From IMG/VR virus record IMGVR_UViG_3300037882_003354, positions 62,001 to 126,000 of that record: 64,000 nucleotides of DNA; one strand, 5' to 3'. The notes beneath the pieces are model-generated. The model worked only from the letters and a program-made list of their open reading frames with translations, was not told the origin of the DNA and did no database searches. A program made the translations under genes and the position numbers. This document shows, one piece after another, positions 52,660 to 63,918 of the stretch. The first letter of the stretch is position 1. Each line of letters starts with the position of its first letter.

Positions 52660-53739
52660 TCAGCCGAATGTGGCGGCTGCTAGCCTGGTTCTAGTATTAC
52701 CCACCCCTGCAGTATCTAGGGCAACTACACCTGTATTGGACACTAAGTTGGTCATAGATAAATACGTAATAGCAGTCTCACCAAACCCAAATATAGCTTT
52801 ATCACCACCATAACCTGCGGCTGCTAGTACGTATCTAGCAGTGCCCACACCTGCAGTGTCTCCGGCAACTACACCTAGGTTAGACACTAGACTGGTTATA
52901 TTTACAACTCCGGGACTAGCCCCATATCCAAATATAACTTTATCACCGCCATAGCCAGCTGCTGCTGAACTATGTCTAGTAGTGCCCACACCTAGAGTAT
53001 CTCCGGCAACCACACCTAGGTTGGACACTAGGTTGGTCAAGGCATAAACGACAGCAGGGAAAACACCGGAAATCCCATATCCAAATATGGCTCGGTCACC
53101 GCCATAACCAGCTGCTGCCACGCCTTGTCTGGCAGTGCCCACACCTAGAGTATCTCCAGCAACCACACCTGTATTGGACACTAGGTTGGTCATAGATAAA
53201 TCTGAAGTAGATTTTCCATAGCCAAATATGGCACGGTCACCGCCATAACCGGCGGCTGCCAAACCGAATCTGGCAGTACCCACACCTAGGGTGTCTCCGG
53301 CAATCACACCTGTATTGGACACTAGGTTGGTTATGGATGAGTTTGTGGCAGGGGTAGTTGGTAGTATACCATGTCCGAATATGGCACGGTCACCGCCATA
53401 ACCAGCAGCAGCCAAGGAGCGCCTACCAGTGCCCAACACTGTGATATCTGCAGCAACTACACCTGTGTTGGACACTAAACTAGCCAAGTTATATGACTGT
53501 GGCGCTCCCGATGCCCCATAGCCAAATATAACCTTTGCGTTTGTATTAATTCTCCGAGTGCCATAATATTTGGATATACTGACTGCACCACTGCCAGGCA
53601 CAGCACCATTTGTCCCACTGGTACCTGCTATGGTGTACGATCCACCAGCATAGTATTCACTCAGGCTGATGGGATTGGCACCACCAAACTCGGTTTGAAT
53701 TTGACTGAATGAAATGCTGCCAGTGCCAGGTATTGCCAT
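52660..53739 (-). CDS. Kelch-like six-blade beta-propeller adhesin (paralogue 1)
   Basis: MAIPGTGSISFSQIQTEFGG.NPISLSEYY leader + 6 repeats TNLVSN.GVVAGDT.GVGT.R..AAAGYGGD.AIFGYG. Confidence 0.75.
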   Translation of the reverse strand: MAIPGTGSISFSQIQTEFGGANPISLSEYYAGGSYTIAGTSGTNGAVPGSGAVSISKYYGTRRINTNAKVIFGYGASGAPQSYNLASLVSNTGVVAADITVLGTGRRSLAAAGYGGDRAIFGHGILPTTPATNSSITNLVSNTGVIAGDTLGVGTARFGLAAAGYGGDRAIFGYGKSTSDLSMTNLVSNTGVVAGDTLGVGTARQGVAAAGYGGDRAIFGYGISGVFPAVVYALTNLVSNLGVVAGDTLGVGTTRHSSAAAGYGGDKVIFGYGASPGVVNITSLVSNLGVVAGDTAGVGTARYVLAAAGYGGDKAIFGFGETAITYLSMTNLVSNTGVVALDTAGVGNTRTRLAAATFG

Positions 53740-53754
53740 GTGTGGTTCTCCCTG

Positions 53755-54864
53755 TCAGCCAAATGTGGCTGCTGCTAGGCCGCTTCTAGCAGTTCCCACA
53801 CCTGCAATTTCTGAGACAACTGCACCCAGGTTGTTCACTCGGTTGGTTATGTTGTAGTAGGTGGTTATTCCGGATATTTTAGAACCATATCCAAATACGG
53901 CTTTATCACCACCATAACTGGCGGCTGCTACACCAGTTCTAGTGGTGCCCACACCTGCAATTTCTGAGACAACTGCACCCTGGTTGTTTACCAAGTTGGT
54001 TATAGAAAAATAGGTGGTGCTAAAGGTAGATCCATATCCAAATATAACCTTGTCACCACCATAGGTGGCGGCCGCTAGACCGCCTCTAGCAGTGCCCACA
54101 CCTGTGGCATTTGAGGCAACGTCGCCGGTGTTGGACACTAGGTTGGTTACAGATACCCATGCGCCTGCGGCAGTACTCCCATATCCAAATATAGCTCTAT
54201 TACCGCCAAATGTAGCTGCTGCTAAATTAGACCTAGCAGTGCCCACACCTGCGGTGTCGCCGGCCACGCCGCCGGTGTTGTTCACTCGGTTGGTAACAGA
54301 TAGCATTGTACCGCCGTTGGGTTGGCCGCCGAACCCATATCCAAATACAGCCCGATCACCACCATAGCCGGCGGCCGCTAAACTATATCGAATAGTGCCC
54401 ACACCTGCGGTGTCGCCGGCCACGCCGCCGGTGTTGTTCACTCGGTTGGTAACAGATACTATTACAGCGAACTGGTTGCTGCTGTATCCATAGCCGAATA
54501 TGGCTTTATCACCACCATAGCCAGCGGCTGCTAAAATGTATCTGAGTGTGCCCACACCCGTGACATCCCCGGCGACCACACCTGCGTTGGACACCAGGTT
54601 GGTCATGGATACACTGCTGAGCTGATTGGCGAACCCATAGCCAAATATAACTCTGGCGTTGGTGTTTATAATAAGTTTTTGAGTGCCATAAAATTTACTC
54701 ATGGCAAAGCTACTGCTGCCAGGCACAGCACCATTGGTTCCGCTGGCACCTGTGGGTGTGTACAAGCCACCAGCATAATACTCACTCAGGCTGATGGGGT
54801 TACTACCACCAAATTCGGCTTGAATTTGACTGAATGATATGCTGCCAGTGCCAGGTATTGCCAC
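53755..54864 (-). CDS. Kelch-like six-blade beta-propeller adhesin (paralogue 2)
   Basis: Same leader (GTG start) and six repeats of the same framework. Confidence 0.75.
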   Translation of the reverse strand: MAIPGTGSISFSQIQAEFGGSNPISLSEYYAGGLYTPTGASGTNGAVPGSSSFAMSKFYGTQKLIINTNARVIFGYGFANQLSSVSMTNLVSNAGVVAGDVTGVGTLRYILAAAGYGGDKAIFGYGYSSNQFAVIVSVTNRVNNTGGVAGDTAGVGTIRYSLAAAGYGGDRAVFGYGFGGQPNGGTMLSVTNRVNNTGGVAGDTAGVGTARSNLAAATFGGNRAIFGYGSTAAGAWVSVTNLVSNTGDVASNATGVGTARGGLAAATYGGDKVIFGYGSTFSTTYFSITNLVNNQGAVVSEIAGVGTTRTGVAAASYGGDKAVFGYGSKISGITTYYNITNRVNNLGAVVSEIAGVGTARSGLAAATFG

Positions 54865-56028: not shown

Positions 56029-56057
56029 TTGACTGATGAAGGGAGCCAGTGTATAGT
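56029..56057 (+). promoter_or_regulatory. sigma70 early promoter
   Basis: TTGACT-17-TATAGT. Confidence 0.75.
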
Positions 56058-56091: not shown

Positions 56092-56664
56092 ATGAGTACC
56101 AGCTACTGGCTGTACATGCACCCGGAACTCACGGGCGAACCCGGCTATTGGAAGGTGGGCAAGAGCCTGACTCCCTACTCGGCAGTCAGAAGCCGACAGC
56201 GATTCCTGGTCAATGACTTCTATTTGACTGCGGTATGGTTCGGTCATCCCAATGACATAGCTGACCAGGAACGAGACATACTGGTACGGTTCCGACCACC
56301 TCACACTCAGCGACTGGGCAGCAGCCGTAGCGAATTGATCTACTACCAGCCACCGGCAGGGCAGCCACAACTGGCACAGGTGCTGGATCAGATGATACTG
56401 AGCAGTCAACGCAGGATCCAGCGCATGCACCCGGATGATGCCCGGGGCTATCATGCCACCAACAGTGGTCAATGCTGCTTTGGGAGTGACAGGGAGGCAT
56501 ATGCCCATGAATGGAGTGCCATGAAATTGATGGACATGTTCAACGTTCAGAGTCCACGCATGCGCAGTCAGCAGGACTATCAGGCTCTGGTGAACCATTT
56601 CGGAGCCAGGTATCGTAGTTCGCAGCCGGAGACAGACGCAGGAGTGCAGGAGACCGGGATGTAA
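56092..56664 (+). CDS. hypothetical protein, weak GIY-YIG/T5orf172-like pattern
   Basis: Start moved to 56092 (AAGGAA SD); YWLY...YWKVGKS..PY..VR.RQ. Confidence 0.6.
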   Translation: MSTSYWLYMHPELTGEPGYWKVGKSLTPYSAVRSRQRFLVNDFYLTAVWFGHPNDIADQERDILVRFRPPHTQRLGSSRSELIYYQPPAGQPQLAQVLDQMILSSQRRIQRMHPDDARGYHATNSGQCCFGSDREAYAHEWSAMKLMDMFNVQSPRMRSQQDYQALVNHFGARYRSSQPETDAGVQETGM

Positions 56665-56840
56665 AAAACCCCGCTAGACGTCATGGCATGACAGCATGTG
56701 TCCGGGCGCTCAGAGCAAATACCCCGCTAGACGCCTGGGCCGGGGAGCCAGGCATCATGCCCTGTATGCAAATACCCCGCTAGACGTATGAGCACCAGAG
56801 CAGGGTCTCATGCTCAGGGTGTAAAAAGCCCGCTAGACGT
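56664..56840. repeat. four 17-nt direct repeats with exact 53-bp period
   Basis: AAAWA(C/G)CCCGCTAGACG at 56664, 56717, 56770, 56823. Confidence 0.95.
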
Positions 56841-56860
56841 GCGGCCGGACCAGGCATGTA

Positions 56861-57034
56861 TGTGAATAACACTGTGATGAACCTGTGGATGGGCTGTGGG
56901 CGACCTGTGTACAGGCTGTGGATAACTTGGTGGACAGGGCAGGAGTATTTTGGCATAGTCTGCCTGCCTGCTCAGCGTGTGAAAACCCTGAATCAGAGTG
57001 ACCCTGTGACACCACCCCTGATTCATGTGGAATA
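56861..57034 (-). promoter_or_regulatory. DnaA-box cluster
   Basis: Perfect TTWTNCACA matches at 56861-56869 (TTATTCACA) and 56917-56925 (TTATCCACA); one-mismatch copies near 56978 and 57026, all same orientation. Confidence 0.6.
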
Positions 57035-57072
57035 CTCTGAATATTCACTGGCAGATCATGTGGTGGCCACCC

Positions 57073-57100
57073 TTGACAAGCTCAGGGTTTCCTGTATAAT
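57073..57100 (+). promoter_or_regulatory. sigma70 promoter upstream of tRNA
   Basis: TTGACA-16-TATAAT. Confidence 0.8.
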
Positions 57101-57145
57101 CTGATAAATAGACTCACCTGCTCAGATGGGTCACATGTTATTTAT

Positions 57146-57229
57146 GCCCGGGTGGTGAAATGGTAGACACAAGGGACTTAAAATCCCTCGGCGCAAGCTG
57201 TACCGGTTCGAGTCCGGTCCCGGGCACCA
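57146..57229 (+). tRNA. trnL-UAA: tRNA-Leu (anticodon UAA)
   Basis: GCCCGGG/CCCGGGC acceptor stem, TGGTAGAC D-loop, AGGGA-CTTAAAA-TCCCT anticodon arm, long variable arm, GTTCGAGTC, encoded CCA. Confidence 0.97.
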
Positions 57230-57231
57230 CA

Positions 57232-57640
57232 GAGTATGCTCCATACTCATCCGTTCACTGGAGCAAGACCTGTTTTGAGTACTCCAATATTATCCAATTG
57301 ATAATGATATGAGTATCTTGACAGGCCTCCGCTGAATATTTCCACATACTAGTATTGAGTATCTCCAGAGTAAGTCCTGATACTAATATCGAGTATCTGC
57401 CCGGGAGTATCTGAGTATTGAGTATGGGTATCTGCTCCGGAGTAAGTCCTGATACTAGTATTGAGTATGTATTATGTGTATGTATTTGGAGTATCATGGT
57501 AAATACTATACACACAGGAGTTACCATTATGATGATTGCACTATACTTTCTCTTCATGTTCATATTCTACATGGCGTTCTTATACTATTTCCGAGACTGA
57601 GTAACCGCATACTCCGGAGGTATGTTATCTCCTGGAGTAT
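57232..57640. repeat. GAGTA-rich tract with 18-bp direct repeat and palindromes
   Basis: 14 GAGTA copies counted on + strand; GAGTAAGTCCTGATACTA at 57368 and 57440. Confidence 0.85.
57529..57600 (+). CDS. 23-aa hydrophobic membrane peptide
   Basis: MMIALYFLFMFIFYMAFLYYFRD; AGGAG SD and TAAATA upstream. Confidence 0.5.
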   Translation: MMIALYFLFMFIFYMAFLYYFRD

Positions 57641-57721: not shown

Positions 57722-57749
57722 ATTATAGCGGTCTGACTCCATTCGTCAA
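57722..57749 (-). promoter_or_regulatory. leftward sigma70 promoter
   Basis: TTGACG-16-TATAAT on minus strand. Confidence 0.7.
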
Positions 57750-57752
57750 TCC

Positions 57753-57777
57753 AAGACCCTGCACCGTGTAGGGTCTT
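57753..57777. other. 11-bp inverted repeat between divergent promoters
   Basis: AAGACCCTGCA-CCG-TGTAGGGTCTT (one G-T pair). Confidence 0.75.
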
Positions 57778-57787
57778 TCTTCTGCGC

Positions 57788-57815
57788 TTGACAATCTCTC
57801 ACCGTGTGCTATAGT
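57788..57815 (+). promoter_or_regulatory. early promoter cassette (TATAGTACTGACAT type)
   Basis: TTGACA-16-TATAGT with TGn. Confidence 0.85.
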
Positions 57816-57842
57816 ACTGACATTGCAACAACGAAAGACATC

Positions 57843-58025
57843 ATGTATTTCCAACTCAGCTGGGTGTTCTCAAACGATCACGAGTGGCATAAGAACTTCG
57901 ACAGCCTGCACGAGCGTGAGATGTTCATTAACACCACCGGGCTCCTGACCCATCCGGACATCGTGCGTGTGACTGTTCAGATTGGCCAGTGCTCAGCTGA
58001 CCTGAAAAATGTCTTGACAGCCTGA
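57843..58025 (+). CDS. small early protein
   Basis: Start moved to 57843; 60 aa. Confidence 0.65.
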   Translation: MYFQLSWVFSNDHEWHKNFDSLHEREMFINTTGLLTHPDIVRVTVQIGQCSADLKNVLTA

Positions 58026-58041
58026 ATCATTGTGCTATAGT
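58014..58041 (+). promoter_or_regulatory. early promoter cassette
   Basis: TTGACA-16-TATAGT with TGn. Confidence 0.85.
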
Positions 58042-58067
58042 ACTGACATCAACGCAAGGAGCCACTC

Positions 58068-58256
58068 ATGGAATTTGATCTAGACATCAACTGGCGCGAG
58101 ATCCGGGATCAGAAGATCTGGCTGTTCAACGCCACCGACCACCAGAGCACACCCTGGGAGCGCCGACAATGCGATGCTCTGCTGGACCTGCTGAGTGACA
58201 TCCAGCGGCAGGCCCTGGAGTCAGGCCATGTGGAGAGCGACGTCTTGGGGTTTTAA
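58068..58256 (+). CDS. small early protein
   Basis: 62 aa, AAGGAG SD. Confidence 0.75.
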   Translation: MEFDLDINWREIRDQKIWLFNATDHQSTPWERRQCDALLDLLSDIQRQALESGHVESDVLGF

Positions 58257-58266
58257 CCACTACCGC

Positions 58267-58294
58267 TTGACAACCTGATGGATTGTGTTATAGT
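58267..58294 (+). promoter_or_regulatory. early promoter cassette
   Basis: TTGACA-16-TATAGT with TGn. Confidence 0.85.
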
Positions 58295-58324
58295 ACTGAC
58301 ATTGCAACAAAGAAGGAGAACCTG

Positions 58325-58519
58325 ATGACCAACGAACAACTGGCAAAAAGCATCCGTCACGGCATGTTCGGCAGCCGTAAGAGCTACGACGAGGCCATGG
58401 AGTACGCCCACAGTGTGGCACGAGCCACGGGTGAGACGGCGGCGGTGATGACTGCCGTGCAGGTGGTGGTGAACACCATCGCAGAAATGATCCTGGAGAA
58501 CGAACGTGCTGAGGCCTGA
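58325..58519 (+). CDS. small early protein
   Basis: Start moved to 58325 (AAGGAG); 64 aa. Confidence 0.75.
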   Translation: MTNEQLAKSIRHGMFGSRKSYDEAMEYAHSVARATGETAAVMTAVQVVVNTIAEMILENERAEA

Positions 58520-58623
58520 TGGCTGGACCGGCTGGCCGGCCGGGCTGTTGCAGGACGATGACCGGGGCCTGAGCCGGTGGCTGGCCACCCGTCTGGATGC
58601 CGGATACATCCTGCGCCACCGGC

Positions 58624-58651
58624 TTGACTTGTTGACGACACCTGCTATAAT
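58624..58651 (+). promoter_or_regulatory. early promoter cassette
   Basis: TTGACT-16-TATAAT with TGn. Confidence 0.8.
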
Positions 58652-58681
58652 ACACTCATGATGACGCAAAAGGAGATGGTG

Positions 58682-58909
58682 ATGAAGCGAGACCGTTTTG
58701 CCATGTACACGCCGGCTGGCGATCAGGCAGTGAGTCAGATGGTGGCCACGGCACGACGCCTGGCCTGGAGCTGGCCCGAGGTGCAGTTCCAACTGCAGGT
58801 GCTCAGCCGCACCGCCGGCTGTGAGGAGACCCTGGACACCGCCGTGCGCGAATGCGTGTATGATGCACTGGGTTTTGGCGCACAAGGAGTCTGCTTCTAT
58901 GACTACTGA
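58682..58909 (+). CDS. small early protein
   Basis: Start moved to 58682 (AGGAG); 75 aa. Confidence 0.7.
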   Translation: MKRDRFAMYTPAGDQAVSQMVATARRLAWSWPEVQFQLQVLSRTAGCEETLDTAVRECVYDALGFGAQGVCFYDY

Positions 58910-59108
58910 TGCCGCCGAGCGGGACCTGGACATCTTGATCCGGTGGATCGCCCATGAACACCTGAGCATCAGCACTCTGGAGGCCCGGGGCCGGGACAGC
59001 CTGGACTTCCACGATGTGCATGTGGATGCCATCAGGAGTGCGCTGCATGCGGCATTCCAACTGGGCCAGTCCAATGGATTGAACGCTGGCTACCGCGACC
59101 TGCTGTAA
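58899..59108 (+). CDS. DUF6900-like small protein
   Basis: IA..HL.I.TLE.R..DSLDFHDV.V..I..AL.AAF..G recalled as DUF6900 pattern; AAGGAG SD. Confidence 0.65.
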   Translation: MTTDAAERDLDILIRWIAHEHLSISTLEARGRDSLDFHDVHVDAIRSALHAAFQLGQSNGLNAGYRDLL

Positions 59109-59142
59109 TACATTCATCAACGTAACACAAGGAGAGATAAAA

Positions 59143-59346
59143 ATGGCACAATTTCAAGTCATGGTGACCATGATCGTGGAAGCCCACAGCGACTCAGAGG
59201 CCTGGAGCATAGCCGAGGCGGCCCTGGACCATCTGGTGTGGCCAGGCACGCCCATACTGCGCTGCACAGTGGGTGAAGTGGACGAGGGTACGCCTGACCA
59301 GCGCATCGCGGCTTCGTTGTCGGACCTTGACAACACCCTGGACTGA
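59143..59346 (+). CDS. small early protein
   Basis: 67 aa, AAGGAG SD. Confidence 0.7.
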   Translation: MAQFQVMVTMIVEAHSDSEAWSIAEAALDHLVWPGTPILRCTVGEVDEGTPDQRIAASLSDLDNTLD

Positions 59347-59355
59347 TGTTATAAT
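59327..59355 (+). promoter_or_regulatory. early promoter cassette (TATAATACATTCATCA type)
   Basis: TTGACA-17-TATAAT with TGn. Confidence 0.85.
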
Positions 59356-59385
59356 ACATTCATCAACGTAACGCAAGGAGATGAC

Positions 59386-59547
59386 ATGAGAAATTACCGA
59401 GCCTATTACAAGGGCAAGACCTTCGACGTGCAGGCGCCCAACTCATTCCAGGCGCAGGAGGCGGCTGCCCGGATCCTGCGCATCAAGAAGACCTGGGAGG
59501 TGGCTGTGGTGCTGTTGGATGTGCCACTTGACACCACCACACTCTGA
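59386..59547 (+). CDS. 53-aa early protein
   Basis: Below cutoff; MRNYRAYYKGKTFDVQAPNSFQAQEAAA...; AAGGAG SD. Confidence 0.7.
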   Translation: MRNYRAYYKGKTFDVQAPNSFQAQEAAARILRIKKTWEVAVVLLDVPLDTTTL

Positions 59548-59556
59548 TGCTATACT
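59528..59556 (+). promoter_or_regulatory. early promoter cassette
   Basis: TTGACA-17-TATACT with TGn. Confidence 0.8.
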
Positions 59557-59580
59557 ACGGCACGAACAACGCAAAAGGAC

Positions 59581-59796
59581 ATGAACATGACATGGGACAG
59601 AGCAGGCCAACGAGTGGCTGGAGTCTACCTGGGCTACACCGTGGCGGGCCTGGTGACGGAAAGCCGAGTCAAGTATGGTGGTCGGGTGCAACACACTCTG
59701 CAACTGGATCAGCCCATGACCTTGTTCAGCACGGAACGCTCGGTCTTGCTCATGGACGAACGCGATCTTTTTAAGACCGGCCGGGAGCCTGCATGA
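59581..59796 (+). CDS. small early protein
   Basis: 71 aa (or start 59587), AAGGA SD. Confidence 0.75.
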   Translation: MNMTWDRAGQRVAGVYLGYTVAGLVTESRVKYGGRVQHTLQLDQPMTLFSTERSVLLMDERDLFKTGREPA

Positions 59797-60047
59797 CGGA
59801 CACCATGAACCGGGAACAGTTCATCCGGTATGCCCGAGAGGCACTGAGCCCGGATGTTCTGGAGGGGCTCTACGAACGCATCAGTGAGCACAATGGCGAG
59901 GTCACTCAGTTCGGCGACAGCTGGCCCGGTGCCCTGGTCAGCATCCGGAGTCAGATTGAGGATGTGCATGCCATTGAGCGCCAGTTGGCCCGGCTGGAAG
60001 CTCGTGAGCCCAGGTGTTTCCACTTCCGTGTGCAGAGTCCCAGATAA
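59793..60047 (+). CDS. small early protein
   Basis: 84 aa, ATGA overlap. Confidence 0.7.
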   Translation: MTDTMNREQFIRYAREALSPDVLEGLYERISEHNGEVTQFGDSWPGALVSIRSQIEDVHAIERQLARLEAREPRCFHFRVQSPR

Positions 60048-60050
60048 GGC

Positions 60051-60078
60051 TTGACAATCTGAATCGTTCTGTTATAGT
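60051..60078 (+). promoter_or_regulatory. early promoter cassette
   Basis: TTGACA-16-TATAGT with TGn. Confidence 0.85.
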
Positions 60079-60109
60079 ACTGACATTGCAACAAAGAAAG
60101 GAAGACGAC

Positions 60110-60445
60110 ATGACTGAAGAAGAAATCATCATCCGTGCAGTGGAGTTGGGCCGTCAGGCTGCTCGCCAGGCCACCCAGGATTACCTGGATGCCAACGGTG
60201 AGCACCACTTCGACTGTGGGTTCGCATGGGTCAAGGTGTCCGCAGACGGCCGCAGTCGAGTGGGACGCGCACTCAAGAAGGCTGGCTTTAATAAGCCCTA
60301 CGGCGAAAAAGGTCTCCAGATGTGGAACCCGTCGGGCCACTTCACGCAGTCCAGGACTGCCAAGGAGTACGGCGCCAGGGCCATGGCTGAGGTGCTCAAG
60401 ACCCGCCTGGGAGTAGAGGCCGTTGGACTCGGCCGGGCAGACTGA
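60110..60445 (+). CDS. small early protein
   Basis: Start moved to 60110 (AAGGA); CGFAWV..WNP..TQS..KE.GA. Confidence 0.75.
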   Translation: MTEEEIIIRAVELGRQAARQATQDYLDANGEHHFDCGFAWVKVSADGRSRVGRALKKAGFNKPYGEKGLQMWNPSGHFTQSRTAKEYGARAMAEVLKTRLGVEAVGLGRAD

Positions 60446-60446
60446 C

Positions 60447-60602
60447 ATGAAGGTCATTTACAATGGCCTGCTGGGCGGGTGGTACATCGTGCGCGGCCCA
60501 CACCACACGCCCCTGGGCGGCAGGTTTGACAGCCGTGAGGCCGCGCTGGCGCATCTGAAAAGAAGGAATGCCCCTACAGGCAGTCGGGGCTTGACAAGTT
60601 GA
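60447..60602 (+). CDS. 51-aa early protein
   Basis: Below cutoff; MKVIYNGLLGGWYIVRGPHHTPLGGRF... Confidence 0.65.
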   Translation: MKVIYNGLLGGWYIVRGPHHTPLGGRFDSREAALAHLKRRNAPTGSRGLTS

Positions 60603-60618
60603 ATCGTTGTGTTATAGT
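60591..60618 (+). promoter_or_regulatory. early promoter cassette
   Basis: TTGACA-16-TATAGT with TGn. Confidence 0.85.
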
Positions 60619-60648
60619 ACTGACATTGCAACAAACAAGGGAAACAAG

Positions 60649-60909
60649 ATGAGCAACTACCCCAACATGTCGTATTGTGCGTTTGAGAACACCACCCTGG
60701 CCATGGGTCAGCTGTTGGGCATGATGTCGCAGGTGGACTGCCTGAAGGAAATGGACTTGTCGCGTGACGAGTTGCGCGCCTTCCGTAACTTGAAGGACCT
60801 GTGCGAGCAGTTCCTGGAGGGCGCCGAGGGCCTGGAGAGCGCCGACGAAGAATACGACGGGCAGCCGGATGAAGCCCAGGAATGGGAATCGTTTGATCCA
60901 GACTGTTGA
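60649..60909 (+). CDS. small acidic early protein
   Basis: Start moved to 60649; NMSYCAFENT motif, acidic tail. Confidence 0.75.
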   Translation: MSNYPNMSYCAFENTTLAMGQLLGMMSQVDCLKEMDLSRDELRAFRNLKDLCEQFLEGAEGLESADEEYDGQPDEAQEWESFDPDC

Positions 60910-60934
60910 CACAGGGCCGCAAGGCCTGTATAAT
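60906..60934 (+). promoter_or_regulatory. early promoter cassette
   Basis: TTGACA-17-TATAAT. Confidence 0.85.
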
Positions 60935-60967
60935 ACATTCATCACAACGCAACGAAAAGGAAACACC

Positions 60968-61171
60968 ATGGAACTGATCCTGAACACGCCCAAGCAACAC
61001 ATGATCGCCACCCTGCTCTGGGAGGCTCCCGACGATCTGACGGTGCAGGCAGTACTGCGCATCTACGGTGCTGAAGCTCGCGCCATCCAGGACCTGATGA
61101 TCGTCACCAGTCTGGACCACGTGGACAACGTGGAAGAAGCACAGAGCATCCTGCAATCCTTTCGCAAGTAA
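60968..61171 (+). CDS. small early protein
   Basis: Start moved to 60968 (AAGGA); 67 aa. Confidence 0.75.
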   Translation: MELILNTPKQHMIATLLWEAPDDLTVQAVLRIYGAEARAIQDLMIVTSLDHVDNVEEAQSILQSFRK

Positions 61172-61187
61172 TTAATAGGCTCACAAG

Positions 61188-61328
61188 ATGACCACGAAAA
61201 TCGGCACCAAGATCCCATCCAGCACCGGCGGTGTCATCACCTTCACCCGTACTGGGCTGATCCATACAGCAGGCAAGGCCTACAGCGGCCGCTCGGTGGA
61301 CACCACTGAGGCCAAGAAGAAGGCTTGA
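61188..61328 (+). CDS. 46-aa early protein
   Basis: Below cutoff; MTTKIGTKIPSSTGGVITFTRTGLIHTAG...; stop overlaps next -35. Confidence 0.55.
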   Translation: MTTKIGTKIPSSTGGVITFTRTGLIHTAGKAYSGRSVDTTEAKKKA

Positions 61329-61352
61329 CAAGCAGACTGATCCTGCTATACT
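61325..61352 (+). promoter_or_regulatory. early promoter cassette
   Basis: TTGACA-16-TATACT with TGn. Confidence 0.85.
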
Positions 61353-61382
61353 ACATTCATCAACAACGCAAAGGCAACAGAC

Positions 61383-61616
61383 ATGGACTACGATGTGCGC
61401 AAGTTTACCAACAAGTTGATTGACCTCCGTGACGAGGGCATGATCAGCGACCGTGACATTGTCATGGCAGCGCTCAAGTACATGAGCGAAGATGATGTGC
61501 GCGACATGTGCGAGTGCAACGGCTTTGACGAGATCATGGACCTGGTGCCGGATGAAGATGAAGACGAGGCCCTGTTGAGCAATTTCAACTATGTCGGCTC
61601 GCGCCACCACTATTAA
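61383..61616 (+). CDS. small acidic early protein
   Basis: 77 aa; LKYMSEDDVRDMCECN. Confidence 0.75.
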   Translation: MDYDVRKFTNKLIDLRDEGMISDRDIVMAALKYMSEDDVRDMCECNGFDEIMDLVPDEDEDEALLSNFNYVGSRHHY

Positions 61617-61628
61617 AAAGGATTTGAC

Positions 61629-61910
61629 ATGAAAGGCGGAACTCTGTTCTATCGCGTGATCCCGGCAGACAAGGATCGTGGCTACTCGCTGTTGACCAGC
61701 TGGGACAAACCAGTGGTCCAGCGCACCTGCTACACCATGAGCAGCATGACCAACCCCAGTCGTGCAGCCATGATGGCCAGTCTGGCTGAAACCCAGCGGC
61801 GTGGTGGTGCAGAGCATCTGGTGGACACCACGGAACTCAACATCCAGAAGAAATTAGCCCGACTCTTCGGTGAAGACGACGCACCCGCCAAAACCGACGT
61901 AACCTGTTGA
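61629..61910 (+). CDS. small early protein
   Basis: 93 aa, AAGGA SD. Confidence 0.6.
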   Translation: MKGGTLFYRVIPADKDRGYSLLTSWDKPVVQRTCYTMSSMTNPSRAAMMASLAETQRRGGAEHLVDTTELNIQKKLARLFGEDDAPAKTDVTC

Positions 61911-62017
61911 TTTATAAGACCCCAAGACGCTCTGTCGCAGCTGGAACGCCTCAAACGGGTCGGTATGCGTGAAAGAACATTTTAGAGCATTGTCGACGTC
62001 TTGAACCTGGAATCCTG

Positions 62018-62242
62018 ATGAATCACAGTCCCATTCTGCAGTGGACAGCCACTGCCGTGACACTGCTGGGCGCCATGCTCACAGCGGCAGCTCTGGATCC
62101 CTGGAATGTCTACTGTCTGAATGCCGGCAGTGGCCTGTGGCTCATCTGGGCCTGGCGGGTGCGCAGCCGCAGCTTGATCGTGGTCAACGCTGGCCTGGTG
62201 CTCATATACATGGCAGGCCTGGTCCGAGCCTTCTTTGCTTGA
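62018..62242 (+). CDS. small three-helix membrane protein
   Basis: 74 aa, largely hydrophobic. Confidence 0.7.
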   Translation: MNHSPILQWTATAVTLLGAMLTAAALDPWNVYCLNAGSGLWLIWAWRVRSRSLIVVNAGLVLIYMAGLVRAFFA

Positions 62243-62266
62243 CAATCTGGATCATTGTGCTATAGT
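62239..62266 (+). promoter_or_regulatory. early promoter cassette
   Basis: TTGACA-16-TATAGT with TGn. Confidence 0.85.
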
Positions 62267-62296
62267 ACTGACATCGCAACACAACAAGGAAGACAC

Positions 62297-62554
62297 ATGA
62301 AGAAAGACCTTATGACCCGTGACCTGAAACGGCATGCCCTGGTACAAGACACCGTGACTGGCTTTGTGCAGGCTCAGTACGAATTGCATGACAGCCATGC
62401 CTACGCCACCGGCTACATGGAGAGCCTGCTGGTGCAGATCTTGACCTATCACGTGACTGAGGCCAACCGTGCCCGATTCCTGGATGAGCTGGCTCGCAGC
62501 GCCGACAAGGCTCGGGTGGAGAGCACCTACAGGGCATTGACCCTGGCTGCGTGA
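62297..62554 (+). CDS. small early protein
   Basis: Start moved to 62297 (AAGGA); 85 aa. Confidence 0.7.
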   Translation: MKKDLMTRDLKRHALVQDTVTGFVQAQYELHDSHAYATGYMESLLVQILTYHVTEANRARFLDELARSADKARVESTYRALTLAA

Positions 62555-62733
62555 TGACTGACTACCAGTTCTGCATGATCCTCCGCGATGGCGGCCATCG
62601 GATCATCACCGTGGGGGCGGAGAATCAGGATCACGCCCATGACATGTTCCATCGCATCTACGGCACGGACCTGCCGGCCTTCCTGTACCAGCACCCGCCG
62701 GCCTTTGTTCAAGAACTGGTTGACAACTCCTGA
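62551..62733 (+). CDS. small early protein
   Basis: 60 aa, overlaps upstream stop. Confidence 0.65.
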   Translation: MMTDYQFCMILRDGGHRIITVGAENQDHAHDMFHRIYGTDLPAFLYQHPPAFVQELVDNS

Positions 62734-62747
62734 ACTCCTGCTATAAT
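62720..62747 (+). promoter_or_regulatory. early promoter cassette
   Basis: TTGACA-16-TATAAT with TGn. Confidence 0.85.
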
Positions 62748-62780
62748 ACATTCATCACAACGCAACAGGGGAAGCAGAGC

Positions 62781-63053
62781 ATGGCCTACGTATTGATCAA
62801 TCGCAACCAGAAGGGACGGCAAGAAGCCATCCGCACCTATGCCACCTACAAGGGTGCCCTGATTGGCATGCGCGTGAGCAACCGCAACGCCGGCTGGACT
62901 CGTAGCAGCCGCTGCTACCTGGGCTACTGCGCCATGGAATGGGGTCATGATGCCGCTGGCGACTACGAGTACGCACCCTACGCCATCATGCACGAGTTTG
63001 ATTACAAGATGCGGCATCAGCCTCTTGACACGGTGCGTGGGGCCGCTGTATAA
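62781..63053 (+). CDS. small early protein
   Basis: 90 aa directly after promoter leader. Confidence 0.7.
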   Translation: MAYVLINRNQKGRQEAIRTYATYKGALIGMRVSNRNAGWTRSSRCYLGYCAMEWGHDAAGDYEYAPYAIMHEFDYKMRHQPLDTVRGAAV

Positions 63054-63054
63054 T
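63025..63054 (+). promoter_or_regulatory. early promoter cassette
   Basis: TTGACA-18-TATAAT. Confidence 0.75.
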
Positions 63055-63084
63055 ACACACATGAAGACACAACAGGAGCAACAG

Positions 63085-63255
63085 ATGAATGACTTTAGAC
63101 GGGCCATGCGAGTCATGTGCTCTGCATGTCAAGAATTTCACCAGGTGAAGGATGTGAAATTCATTGACATCCAGGAAGATTATGCCGGCAGGGATCTGAT
63201 GACCTTTGAGTGCTCGGTGACCAGCACCCAACAAAAGGCCTACGTGCTGGGCTGA
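63085..63255 (+). CDS. small Cys-containing early protein
   Basis: Start moved to 63085 (AGGAG); CSAC...FEC. Confidence 0.7.
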   Translation: MNDFRRAMRVMCSACQEFHQVKDVKFIDIQEDYAGRDLMTFECSVTSTQQKAYVLG

Positions 63256-63259
63256 TCAC

Positions 63260-63287
63260 TTGACAATTGGTGCCATGATGTTATAAT
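63260..63287 (+). promoter_or_regulatory. early promoter cassette
   Basis: TTGACA-16-TATAAT with TGn. Confidence 0.85.
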
Positions 63288-63317
63288 ACACACATGATGA
63301 CACAACTGGAGCAACAC

Positions 63318-63518
63318 ATGAATGAATTCGTAGCATCGGCAGTGGATCGGGTGGAGAGCAAGTTCCTGGTCCACTGCGACACTGATGTTCCAGCCGAGAT
63401 CCTGGCTGATGTCCTGCACTATTGCCGGGTCAAAGGCATTGACTTCGACAACGAGCTGCGCCTGGCTCGTGACTACGTGGAGGCAGAACTGGCTGAGTTT
63501 TTCGGTGTAGGTGCTTGA
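63318..63518 (+). CDS. small early protein
   Basis: Start moved to 63318 (GGAG); LADVLHYC..KGIDF. Confidence 0.75.
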   Translation: MNEFVASAVDRVESKFLVHCDTDVPAEILADVLHYCRVKGIDFDNELRLARDYVEAELAEFFGVGA

Positions 63519-63542
63519 CAACCGGAGCGATCCTGCTATAAT
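63515..63542 (+). promoter_or_regulatory. early promoter cassette
   Basis: TTGACA-16-TATAAT with TGn. Confidence 0.85.
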
Positions 63543-63572
63543 GCTGACATGGACAACGCAAAGGAGCAGCAA

Positions 63573-63875
63573 ATGGAACTGAACACACGGCAGGTACGGG
63601 CAATTGCATTGAAGGCAACGGACAAGCCCTTCCACACTTGGACGGACAAGACCAGCGACTACGATGACGCACGACGCAGCGTGGTGTGGAGTTTTTATGG
63701 CACGGGTGGGGCACAGGCATTGTTTGACCTGTTGCAGGCAGAGTTTGCACGGCTGGGCGTGACGAATAAGTTGACGCTCACGGGCACTGCCTATGAATAC
63801 GTGCGCGTGATTGCACCCCTGGGCAATCTGCCTGCCCTGCGCTGGCAGGACTTGCCTGAAGTTTATCCCATCTGA
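63573..63875 (+). CDS. small early protein
   Basis: Start moved to 63573 (AAGGAG); 100 aa. Confidence 0.7.
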   Translation: MELNTRQVRAIALKATDKPFHTWTDKTSDYDDARRSVVWSFYGTGGAQALFDLLQAEFARLGVTNKLTLTGTAYEYVRVIAPLGNLPALRWQDLPEVYPI

Positions 63876-63889
63876 TGGTGGCAGGGTGC

Positions 63890-63918
63890 TTGACAACACC
63901 AGCACCCTGCGCTATAAT
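63890..63918 (+). promoter_or_regulatory. early promoter cassette
   Basis: TTGACA-17-TATAAT. Confidence 0.85.

What the first reader, a model, noticed from the sequence alone, without database searches (positions are those of the whole stretch)
56664..56840. Four helically phased 17-bp repeats (exact 53-bp period) at the strand switch
Seen: AAAWA(C/G)CCCGCTAGACG at 56664, 56717, 56770, 56823; the intervening 36-nt segments differ but keep exact length and contain small inverted repeats (TCATG-G-CATGA; CCTGG..CCAGG; TGAGCA..TGCTCA). 53 bp is about five helical turns, placing all sites on one face. Known: iterons are phased initiator-binding repeats. Inference: initiator or packaging-protein binding array, or a repeat-processed small RNA, at the point where gene orientation flips.
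Basis: partly seen in the sequence, partly recalled or inferred. Interest (0 to 1): 0.7.

Follow-up and report, generated by a model that had tools for sequence, protein, structure and literature searches.

The report
Conserved repeat boxes heading phage early genes
Four evenly spaced copies of a short DNA box in a 322-kb freshwater jumbo phage belong to a previously undescribed box family that marks the start of the early-gene block in about 30 related uncultured phages; it is most likely a row of protein-binding sites, but its role has not been shown.

Summary
Four copies of AAAWA(C/G)CCCGCTAGACG start at 56664, 56717, 56770 and 56823, exactly 53 bp apart, and form the only such cluster in the 322.5-kb genome.

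- **Family:** the conserved unit is a 14-nt box, AAWACCCCGCTRTA. I found it as 3-5 same-strand copies in 32 non-redundant phage or metagenome contigs. It always sits just upstream of, and co-oriented with, a dense run of sigma-70-type early promoters. Some relatives also carry 8-14 DnaA boxes at 11-bp spacing nearby.
- **Spacing:** it is not conserved. The commonest spacings are 26, 53 and 33 bp (range 26-125), so "all sites on one face" is a local feature.
- **Neighbouring gene:** ORF 56092-56664 has a GIY-YIG nuclease fold and looks like a mobile homing-endonuclease cassette. It accompanies only 4 of the 32 arrays, so it is not the array's dedicated binder.
- **Exclusions:** spacers are related to each other, which excludes a CRISPR array. 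No Rfam family, promoter geometry or coding repeat fits.

Best reading: an iteron-like array of head-to-tail binding sites within a roughly 1-kb non-coding control region. A replication origin is the leading role, a genome-end or packaging signal second. An RNA-level (nut/rut-like) role remains a live rival.

The parts
56029..56057 (+). Sigma-70-type promoter (TTGACT-17-TATAGT). It is the first of the + strand early promoters and drives ORF 56092-56664, and with it the array.
   Evidence: No terminator-like site lies between it and 57071 on the + strand.
56092..56664 (+). P0001, 190 aa: a GIY-YIG-fold (T5orf172-like) nuclease domain plus a C-terminal helical domain. It looks like a free-standing homing-endonuclease cassette. 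Its stop codon abuts box 1.
   Evidence: Z 6.2-6.8 to HIGLE and Slx1; homologue P0016 hits T5orf172. It is hypervariable compared with its flanks. Contig depth in run X1 is 2-3 against 10-16 for the flanks.
56664..56680 (+). Box 1 (AAAAACCCCGCTAGACG)
56717..56733 (+). Box 2 (AAATACCCCGCTAGACG)
56770..56786 (+). Box 3 (AAATACCCCGCTAGACG). Contigs from other strains break or recombine exactly at its 5' edge (56769).
56823..56839 (+). Box 4 (AAAAAGCCCGCTAGACG)
56680..56692 (+). Inverted repeat GTCAT-GGC-ATGAC, abutting box 1
56733..56753 (+). Inverted repeat GCCTGG-N9-CCAGGC, abutting box 2
56788..56811 (+). Inverted repeat ATGAG-N14-CTCAT after box 3. The stem is kept in L015 while the loop differs.
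56884..56937 (+). Five DnaA-box-like 9-mers at an 11-bp period, all in one orientation. Only 56917-56925 is a perfect TGTGGATAA. Some relatives have 8-14 consensus boxes at the equivalent place.
56840..57072 (.). Conserved non-coding block, 96-99% identical to L015 from 56881 on and 76% for 56840-56880. The 82-aa ORF 56856-57104 called here is not coding-like: its 12 differences are spread evenly over the codon positions.
57073..57100 (+). Perfect consensus promoter TTGACA-16-TATAAT for the tRNA
57146..57229 (+). tRNA-Leu(UAA)
57300..57500 (+). AT-rich (30-44% GC) stretch of GAGTATCT-type and 34-nt direct repeats. It is the only candidate unwinding element in the control region.

Best explanation
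The array is one member of a conserved family of 14-nt asymmetric boxes (AAWACCCCGCTRTA; here extended to a 17-mer). These boxes occur as 3-5 head-to-tail copies at a single locus per genome. They are found in a clade of uncultured freshwater jumbo phages whose large terminase is closest to that of Pseudomonas phage PA5oct.

Most likely the array works on double-stranded DNA as a row of binding sites for one sequence-specific protein, bound as monomers in one orientation, in the manner of iterons. It forms the upstream module of a roughly 1-kb non-coding control region. That region reads: boxes, a conserved block, DnaA-type boxes, a strong promoter with a tRNA gene, then AT-rich repeats. It separates the leftward late or structural genes from the rightward early block transcribed by host RNA polymerase.

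My leading guess for the role is assembly of a replication-initiation complex, an origin that uses host DnaA in at least some members. A genome-end, packaging or DNA-entry signal is the second guess.

Shown here: the box, its conservation, its uniqueness in the genome, its polarity and its context. Inferred: that a protein binds it, and what it does. The exact 53-bp period in this genome comes from tandem duplication of a 53-bp unit. It is a recurrent but not obligatory spacing.
For: - The array is unique in the genome. In four of the five related records scanned the box is confined to a single cluster; G002 has no cluster.
- Across 106 unique units from 32 arrays the box is near-invariant (part of this follows from the selection pattern), while the flanks carry no information. 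This excludes a fixed -10/-35 promoter geometry.
- All arrays are co-oriented with 4-10 strong sigma-70 promoters in the next 4 kb, against 0-1 upstream.
- DnaA boxes at an 11-bp period lie within 0.2-0.9 kb: 12 in L014, 11 in L018, 14 in L241, about 8 in L041 and L051, and one perfect plus four degenerate in the window.
- Substitutions between strains fall in the spacers, not in the box cores.
- Copy number varies by whole units: a contig in run X3 lacks exactly one 53-bp unit.
- Two unrelated homing-endonuclease families (GIY-YIG-like and HNH_3) are inserted flush against the array in different phages, as expected next to an indispensable conserved target.
- The array sits at a divergent late/early transcription border.
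Against: - No binding protein has been identified, and the adjacent gene is not a plausible dedicated initiator.
- Spacings of 26-125 bp are unlike the regular 21-24 bp of classical iterons.
- Cumulative GC skew has its extremes at about 30 and 294 kb, not at 118.7 kb.
- The window's own DnaA-box run is weak, and about two thirds of related loci have 0-2 boxes.
- The array itself is GC-rich, at 57-62%.
- Position-specific hairpins next to the boxes and a co-varying hairpin in the first unit of one subfamily point to a single-stranded, possibly RNA, form.
Confidence: 0.45

Rival explanations
1. RNA-level element. The boxes and their adjacent hairpins act in the nascent early transcript, as tandem nut/rut-like or processing sites. 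They would recruit a host or phage factor (Nus factors, Rho, an RNase) at the 3' end of the first early gene.
For: - In the window the array is transcribed from the 56029 promoter with no terminator in between.
- In at least 9 loci a + strand ORF stops exactly at the first box.
- Hairpins start at the box's 3' edge in 3 of 4 units (p about 0.001).
- The first-unit hairpin in 11 relatives keeps its stems through changes on both sides at 2 pairs and uses G-U pairs.
- The lone extra copy at genome position 128939 lies in a hairpin loop just after an early ORF.
- Lambda nutR has the same layout and a similar sequence: the cro stop codon TAA, then ATAACCCCGCTCTTA, then the boxB hairpin.
- Spacers show a mild C over G excess across the family (1.28).
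Against: - The region as a whole does not fold better than shuffles (z 0.07 and -0.69).
- The 26-bp units leave no room for a hairpin.
- The 3' half of boxA (CTCTTTA) is absent.
- Hairpin loops are not conserved.
- Many relatives have no clear promoter upstream of the array.
- The window's own spacers have G over C.
- No Rfam family matches.
- Early genes each have their own promoter and terminator, so antitermination is not obviously needed.
- The only metatranscriptome available shows no pieces over the array.
Confidence: 0.22
2. Genome-end, packaging or DNA-entry signal. The early block would lie in a long terminal repeat, as in PA5oct, T5 and SPO1. The array would mark its outer border as a small-terminase, end-binding or injection-control site (T5 iss-like).
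For: - TerL is 55% identical to that of PA5oct.
- The PA5oct genome has a 39-kb direct terminal repeat of early genes (PMC7318152). It carries a unique array of three 21-bp direct repeats at nt 50-121 of that repeat.
- T5 has a 1.2-kb untranslated region with nine direct repeats and eight DnaA boxes at the inner border of its terminal repeat, and an HNH gene is inserted between its repeat regions (bioRxiv 10.1101/866236).
- The window's record closes on a 99-bp overlap, consistent with a collapsed repeat or a permuted genome.
- A second repeat element (four 11-bp units) lies at the right edge of the early block.
Against: - Only assembled contigs were available, so no read-start pile-ups or clean two-fold depth step could be seen. 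Depths are confounded by mixed strains.
- Related contigs run straight through the array.
- T4-type terminases usually package by headful without a unique site.
- The box is absent from the other border of the early block.
Confidence: 0.15
3. A polar anti-nuclease (Chi-like) signal. The reverse complement, AGCGGGGT, would be read by the host RecBCD/AddAB enzyme entering from the left, protecting the early block.
For: - The reverse complement contains AGCGG, the Bacillus subtilis Chi sequence (from my own knowledge).
- All copies are on one strand.
- In one related record (G004) six dispersed single copies are all on the array's strand and none on the other. These include two exact 12-mers ACCCCGCTGTAG lying inside genes on the opposite strand.
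Against: - The conserved box is 14 nt, longer than any known Chi.
- The other related records show no dispersed copies at all, and the window's own genome has only 3 forward and 2 reverse, with no strand bias.
- The host is unknown, so over-representation in the host genome could not be tested.
Confidence: 0.04
4. A mini-CRISPR array or a solitary-repeat anti-CRISPR RNA.
For: Superficially it looks like a repeat-spacer array with a fixed period and spacers of about 33-36 nt.
Against: - The repeat is only 14-20 nt.
- Spacers are related to each other (mean identity 0.41 against 0.26 by chance, p < 2e-4).
- Spacer length varies from about 12 to over 100 nt in relatives.
- The spacers match no phage record.
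- There is no Rfam CRISPR repeat family match.
Confidence: 0.01
5. No function of its own: a recent tandem duplication, or scars of recombination left by homing-endonuclease cassettes.
For: - Units 1 and 2 belong to the hypervariable cassette, while units 3 and 4 belong to the conserved backbone.
- Strain breakpoints fall exactly at a box edge.
- Copy number is polymorphic.
Against: - The 14-nt box is kept in 32 arrays from phages whose proteins have diverged to about 50% identity, while the spacers are scrambled.
- Position and polarity are fixed relative to the early block.
Confidence: 0.08

Closest known systems
Iterons of theta-type plasmid and phage origins (RK2 oriV, P1 oriR, lambda ori)
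   Same: Several same-orientation copies of a 14-17 bp box at a unique locus, with DnaA boxes and an AT-rich stretch in the neighbourhood.
   Different: Spacing is irregular (26-125 bp) rather than about 22 bp. There is no initiator gene next door; the neighbour is a GIY-YIG-fold endonuclease-like cassette. The array is GC-rich and separated from the AT-rich stretch by a tRNA gene. Origin activity is untested.
Phage T5 untranslated Repeat Region 3 / injection stop signal (Davison, bioRxiv 10.1101/866236)
   Same: A roughly 1-kb non-coding region beside the host-polymerase-transcribed early genes, holding direct repeats plus a set of DnaA boxes. A 52-bp spacer was noted there as five helical turns. 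A homing endonuclease gene is inserted among the repeats. The function is unproven there too.
   Different: There is no sequence similarity. T5's region is defined by large inverted repeats and lies at a mapped terminal-repeat border. Here the termini are unknown and the repeats are simple direct boxes.
Phage T4 oriE '12-nt iterons' (Kreuzer and Brister review, PMC3016281)
   Same: Evenly spaced short direct repeats near a point of transcriptional divergence, dependent on an early promoter, in a phage with T4-like early (sigma-70) and late (TAAATA) promoters.
   Different: The T4 repeats lie inside gene 5. They follow the 24-nt period of its beta-helix coding repeats and have never been tied to origin activity. 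The repeats here are non-coding and have a 53-bp period, which is not a multiple of 3.
Lambda nutR / rutA region
   Same: A stop codon TAA of the first early gene, immediately followed by A-rich sequence plus CCCCGCT, and then a hairpin.
   Different: The boxA 3' half is missing. The hairpin loops are not conserved. The unit is repeated four times. No N-like protein has been identified.

Membership tests
Iteron-type replication origin | Three or more direct repeats of about 17-22 bp in one orientation at a single locus | tested here: met
   Four 17-mers, unique in the genome. The core box is 14 nt.
Iteron-type replication origin | Regular spacing of about two helical turns (21-24 bp), conserved among relatives | tested here: not met
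   53 bp here. Relatives show 26, 33, 45, 53 and up to 125 bp.
Iteron-type replication origin | An adjacent gene for the iteron-binding initiator | tested here: not met
   The adjacent ORF has a GIY-YIG fold and looks like a homing endonuclease. It is present at only 4 of 32 arrays.
Iteron-type replication origin | DnaA boxes and an AT-rich unwinding element nearby | tested here: inconclusive
   There is one perfect and four degenerate boxes at an 11-bp period at 56884-56937, and strong clusters in some relatives. The AT-rich repeats at 57250-57600 lie beyond the tRNA gene.
Iteron-type replication origin | Replication starts there | not testable with these tools
   GC skew is uninformative and no raw reads were available.
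CRISPR array | Repeats of at least about 23 nt separated by unrelated spacers of near-constant length | tested here: not met
   The repeat is 14-20 nt. Spacers are related to each other (0.41 against 0.26 by chance). Spacer length varies widely in relatives.
Lambdoid nut site | A boxA consensus (C/T)GCTCTT(T)A followed by a boxB hairpin with a conserved loop | tested here: not met
   Only CGCT and the upstream A-rich CCCC context are shared with lambda. The hairpin loops are 3, 9 and 14 nt and unrelated.
T5-type iss / terminal-repeat border region | A non-coding repeat region with DnaA boxes flanking the host-polymerase early genes | tested here: met
   compared.
T5-type iss / terminal-repeat border region | Position at the border of a long terminal repeat / first-step-transfer DNA | not testable with these tools
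   Only Logan contigs from mixed strains were available.
Sigma-70, late or phage-polymerase promoter array | Conserved elements at a fixed distance from the box, and many copies across the genome | tested here: not met
   The flanks carry no information. There are only 5 copies in 322 kb. The phage's late motif NTAAATA is distinct from the box.
Chi-like polar motif | Over-representation and strand bias in the host genome | not testable with these tools
   The host is unknown.

The most novel reading that the evidence does not exclude
The box array, together with the 11-bp-phased DnaA-box run and the tRNA promoter, is a conserved polar 'entry module' of a whole clade of uncultured freshwater jumbo phages. 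It would sit at the leading genome end, or at the border of a long terminal repeat, and control DNA entry, end protection or the start of replication by capturing host DnaA and a box-binding protein. That would make it a functional analogue of the still unexplained T5 injection-stop region, in T4-like jumbo phages.
Probability: 0.12. Interest if true: 0.75.

Novelty: new member of a known kind. Interest (0 to 1): 0.45.

Why it matters
Cis-acting sites such as origins, packaging sites and entry signals are almost unknown for jumbo phages related to PA5oct and Rak2, because most are known only from metagenomes. This work defines a 14-nt box family with a fixed place and polarity at the head of the early block. 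That gives a concrete, searchable landmark for three tasks: orienting such genomes, looking for their origins or termini, and fishing for the protein that binds the box. The repeated insertion of different homing endonucleases flush against the array marks it as a conserved target. If the link to phased DnaA boxes is functional, it would show large lytic phages making use of the host initiator.

Tried and rejected
- **Exact array elsewhere:** a search for the exact array in viral contigs found nothing. P0001 patterns in viral contigs also found nothing.
- **Relatives via the neighbouring gene:** relatives found through the neighbouring 133-aa protein are not syntenic and have no array.
- **Cultured phages:** blastn against cultured phages matched only the tRNA.
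- **RNA families and folds:** Rfam at gathering and at permissive thresholds found only the tRNA. Whole-array folds on either strand are no better than shuffles.
- **Annotation of flanking genes:** Pfam and PHROGs on flanking and early genes were mostly uninformative.
- **Bacterial genomes:** the scan returned only unrelated coding or high-GC repeats.
- **Reads:** public runs hold only assembled contigs from related strains. Termini, a coverage step and transcription of the array could therefore not be read. The depth ratios were inconsistent.
- **Promoter ideas:** late, middle, phage-polymerase and N4-type promoter readings were rejected on the logo.
- **T4 oriE:** T4 oriE iterons as a true analogue were rejected, because they are gp5 coding repeats.
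- **Rho-site composition:** the C over G test was weak and fails in the window itself.
- **Literature:** a search for the box sequence found nothing relevant.
- **P0001 and the 82-aa ORF:** Foldseek alone gave no significant match for P0001; the all-against-all aligner did. The 82-aa ORF 56856-57104 was rejected as a gene.

Full report
**Observation**

The window is bases 62001-126000 of a 322,512-bp IMG/VR phage record. The record's 99-bp "terminal repeat" is an assembly overlap. Four copies of AAAWA(C/G)CCCGCTAGACG start at 56664, 56717, 56770 and 56823, exactly 53 bp apart.

- The 11-nt core occurs 4 times in the window against 0.32 expected and nowhere else in the genome.
- A relaxed pattern finds one further copy, at genome position 128939. 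It sits in the loop of a hairpin just after an early ORF.
- The 17-mers are 88-100% identical. The 36-nt spacers are 28-56% identical, which is still above chance (mean 0.41 against 0.26, p < 2e-4). The units are therefore diverged copies of one 53-bp duplication, not unrelated spacers.
- A perfect 5-6 bp stem begins at the 3' edge of the box in three of the four units (shuffle p about 0.001, post hoc).
- The array as a whole does not fold better than shuffled sequence on either strand.

**Context in the window**

- Up to about 55995 the genes are on the minus strand. They are large structural and tail-fibre-like proteins plus a DNA ligase.
- A sigma-70-type promoter at 56029 starts the + strand.
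- It is followed by ORF 56092-56664 (P0001), then the array.
- Next comes a conserved non-coding block with five DnaA-box-like 9-mers at an 11-bp period. One of these, at 56917, is a perfect box.
- A perfect consensus promoter at 57073 and tRNA-Leu(UAA) at 57146-57229 follow.
- Then comes an AT-rich stretch of GAGTAT-type repeats.
- From 57788 to genome position about 135.5 kb there is a dense run of TTGACA-N16-TATAGT promoters in front of very small genes.

The divergent strand switch is therefore 0.6 kb upstream of the array. Long ORFs are preceded by NTAAATA (13-15-fold enriched). The phage thus has T4-like early and late promoter types.

Its large terminase is 55% identical to that of Pseudomonas phage PA5oct, followed by Atu_ph07 and Rak2-like phages.

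**Relatives**

Homologues of P0001 exist only in metagenomes. Their contigs carry the same box immediately after the gene, but with other spacings:
- L015: 62 and 53
- L014: 33, 33, 83 and 33
- L017: 49, 36 and 26

Pattern scans of viral and metagenome contigs, filtered for non-coding, non-identical units, gave 32 non-redundant arrays.

The logo from 106 unique units is AAWACCCCGCTRTA. Some positions were fixed by the search pattern, but A at -3 and T at +9 were free and are still conserved. Nothing is conserved in the flanks. That argues against any promoter with fixed -10/-35 geometry.

The spacings are 26 bp (22 times), 53 (10), 33 (8) and many other values up to 125. The 53-bp period recurs in L043, L228, L015, L056 and L202, but it is not obligatory. 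The commonest spacing puts neighbouring boxes on opposite faces of the helix.

In every array with enough flanking sequence, 4-10 strong promoters follow on the same strand within 4 kb, against 0-1 upstream. Of five related records scanned in full, four carry the box as one cluster and G002 has none. G004 also has six dispersed co-oriented single copies.

Several relatives have 8-14 consensus DnaA boxes at 11-bp spacing 0.6-0.9 kb downstream of the array (L014, L018, L241, L041, L051). About two thirds have 0-2.

**The adjacent gene**

- P0001 has no Pfam hit, but a distant homologue hits T5orf172.
- The AlphaFold model (pLDDT 81) aligns best with the GIY-YIG nucleases HIGLE and Slx1 (Z 6.2-6.8, next hit Z 4.0). 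I-TevI and UvrC appear lower in the list.
- Residues 131-180 form a helical pair that weakly resembles HTH domains.
- The gene accompanies only 4 of the 32 arrays. L019 has an HNH_3 endonuclease in the same place. Twelve loci have a small GIY-YIG-like early gene downstream instead (assigned by motif inspection only, Pfam gave no hit).
- Between the window and its close relative L015, the flanks are 90-99% identical, but P0001 is 68% and units 1-2 are 30-55% identical.
- In run X1, the contigs covering P0001 have depth 2-3 against 10-16 for the flanks. One contig replaces 54830-56768 with 157 other bases. Contigs from three runs (X1, X2, X5) break at 56768/56769, the 5' edge of box 3. One contig in X3 lacks exactly one 53-bp unit. 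In four runs the 5' leader of P0001 is joined to the promoter at 58014.

P0001 is therefore a mobile, homing-endonuclease-like cassette that carries box copies at its 3' end. It is not a dedicated partner of the array. Different endonuclease families sit flush against the array, which fits the array being a conserved and probably indispensable target.

**What it is**

The data establish five properties:
- A unique locus in the genome.
- A conserved 14-nt asymmetric box.
- Strict polarity with respect to the early block.
- Selection on the box but not on the spacer sequence.
- Variation in copy number by whole units.

The simplest mechanism is a row of head-to-tail binding sites for one sequence-specific protein on duplex DNA. 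This is the same class as iterons, cosB/pac repeats and the T5 repeat region.

- **Origin.** I rank this first. The reasons are the phased DnaA boxes, the AT-rich repeats and the divergent transcription. I hold it weakly, because GC skew is silent, no initiator gene is evident, and the spacing is irregular.
- **Genome end or packaging.** I rank this second. PA5oct has a 39-kb terminal repeat made of early genes and a unique array of three 21-bp repeats at its left edge. T5 has direct repeats plus DnaA boxes at the border of its terminal repeat.
- **RNA-level role.** This remains open. The array is co-transcribed with P0001. Hairpins abut the boxes. The first unit in one subfamily forms a hairpin with some compensatory changes. 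Lambda nutR shows a strikingly similar arrangement of stop codon, A-rich CCCCGCT and hairpin. Against it, the boxA 3' half is missing, the 26-bp units have no room for a hairpin, and the C over G bias is weak.
- **Rejected.** CRISPR, promoter-array and coding-repeat readings are all rejected. T4's oriE "iterons" proved to be the coding repeats of the gp5 beta-helix, so they are a poor precedent.

**Verdict**

This is a real, non-random and conserved cis-element family that appears to be undescribed; a literature search for the box found nothing. It belongs to the known kind of phage direct-repeat control arrays. The claims about helical phasing and about the neighbouring protein do not survive comparison with relatives.

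Noticed in passing
window 56884-56937; L014 2240-2440; L018 1520-1670: DnaA-type boxes are arranged head-to-tail at an 11-bp period, the spacing at which DnaA is known to oligomerise in oriC. The window has one perfect and four degenerate boxes. Relatives have 11-14 near-consensus boxes. The orientation relative to the array, and the position relative to the tRNA gene, differ between subgroups.
   Followed up: partly
window 57300-57500: A second repeat system lies in the most AT-rich part of the region (30-44% GC). It has at least six GAGTATCT/GAGTATG copies and three copies of a 34-nt unit (57329, 57363, 57435). One run (X5) has a contig that skips 79 bp here.
   Followed up: no
window 57740-63900 (continues to genome position about 135.5 kb): About 25 near-consensus TTGACA-N16-TATAGT(ACTGAC) promoters, several seen to be preceded by a terminator-like hairpin, stand in front of 50-100-aa genes. 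This resembles the 'promoter-early stem-loop' cassettes described for T4-type phages (from my own knowledge).
   Followed up: partly
L015 2990-3640: In the close relative, the first 30 nt or so of the tRNA-Leu gene are followed by a box copy (AAAAGCCCGCTGTA), an HNH-type endonuclease ORF and a second, different, complete tRNA-Leu(UAA). This looks like endonuclease-driven replacement of the tRNA gene.
   Followed up: no
window 58050 joined to 56074 (runs X1, X2, X3, X5): In four metagenomes a contig joins the promoter at 58014-58050 directly to the leader of P0001, with GCA between. The cassette, or at least its leader, therefore sits at another early-region position in other strains.
   Followed up: no
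genome 136341-136384 (outside the window; L323 10341-10384): Four tandem 11-bp units TCTTCAAATGA lie in a 400-bp non-coding gap at the right edge of the early promoter cluster. This may be a second border element.
   Followed up: no
genome 128939 (outside the window): A single extra box, AAAACCCCGCTGCAAGG, lies in the loop of a CACCCT/AGGGTG hairpin between an early ORF's stop codon and the next promoter.
   Followed up: partly
window 52660-54864, minus strand: Two adjacent paralogous ORFs (359 and 369 aa) contain 141- and 156-bp tandem coding repeats (TRF scores 353-439). Strain contigs show many rearrangements among these repeats, so this looks like a variable fibre or receptor-binding gene pair.
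   Followed up: no
window 57529-57600: A 23-aa very hydrophobic mini-ORF (MMIALYFLFMFIFYMAFLYYFRD) with a good ribosome-binding site is conserved in L015.
   Followed up: no
G004 (116.7-kb related record): All nine ACCCCGCT copies are on one strand: three in the array and six dispersed. Two of the dispersed copies are exact ACCCCGCTGTAG 12-mers inside genes on the opposite strand. This strand-polar scatter was not seen in the other records.
   Followed up: partly
whole genome: NTAAATA is 13-15-fold enriched in the 100 nt upstream of ORFs of 200 aa or more. This is a T4-like late-promoter motif.
   Followed up: partly
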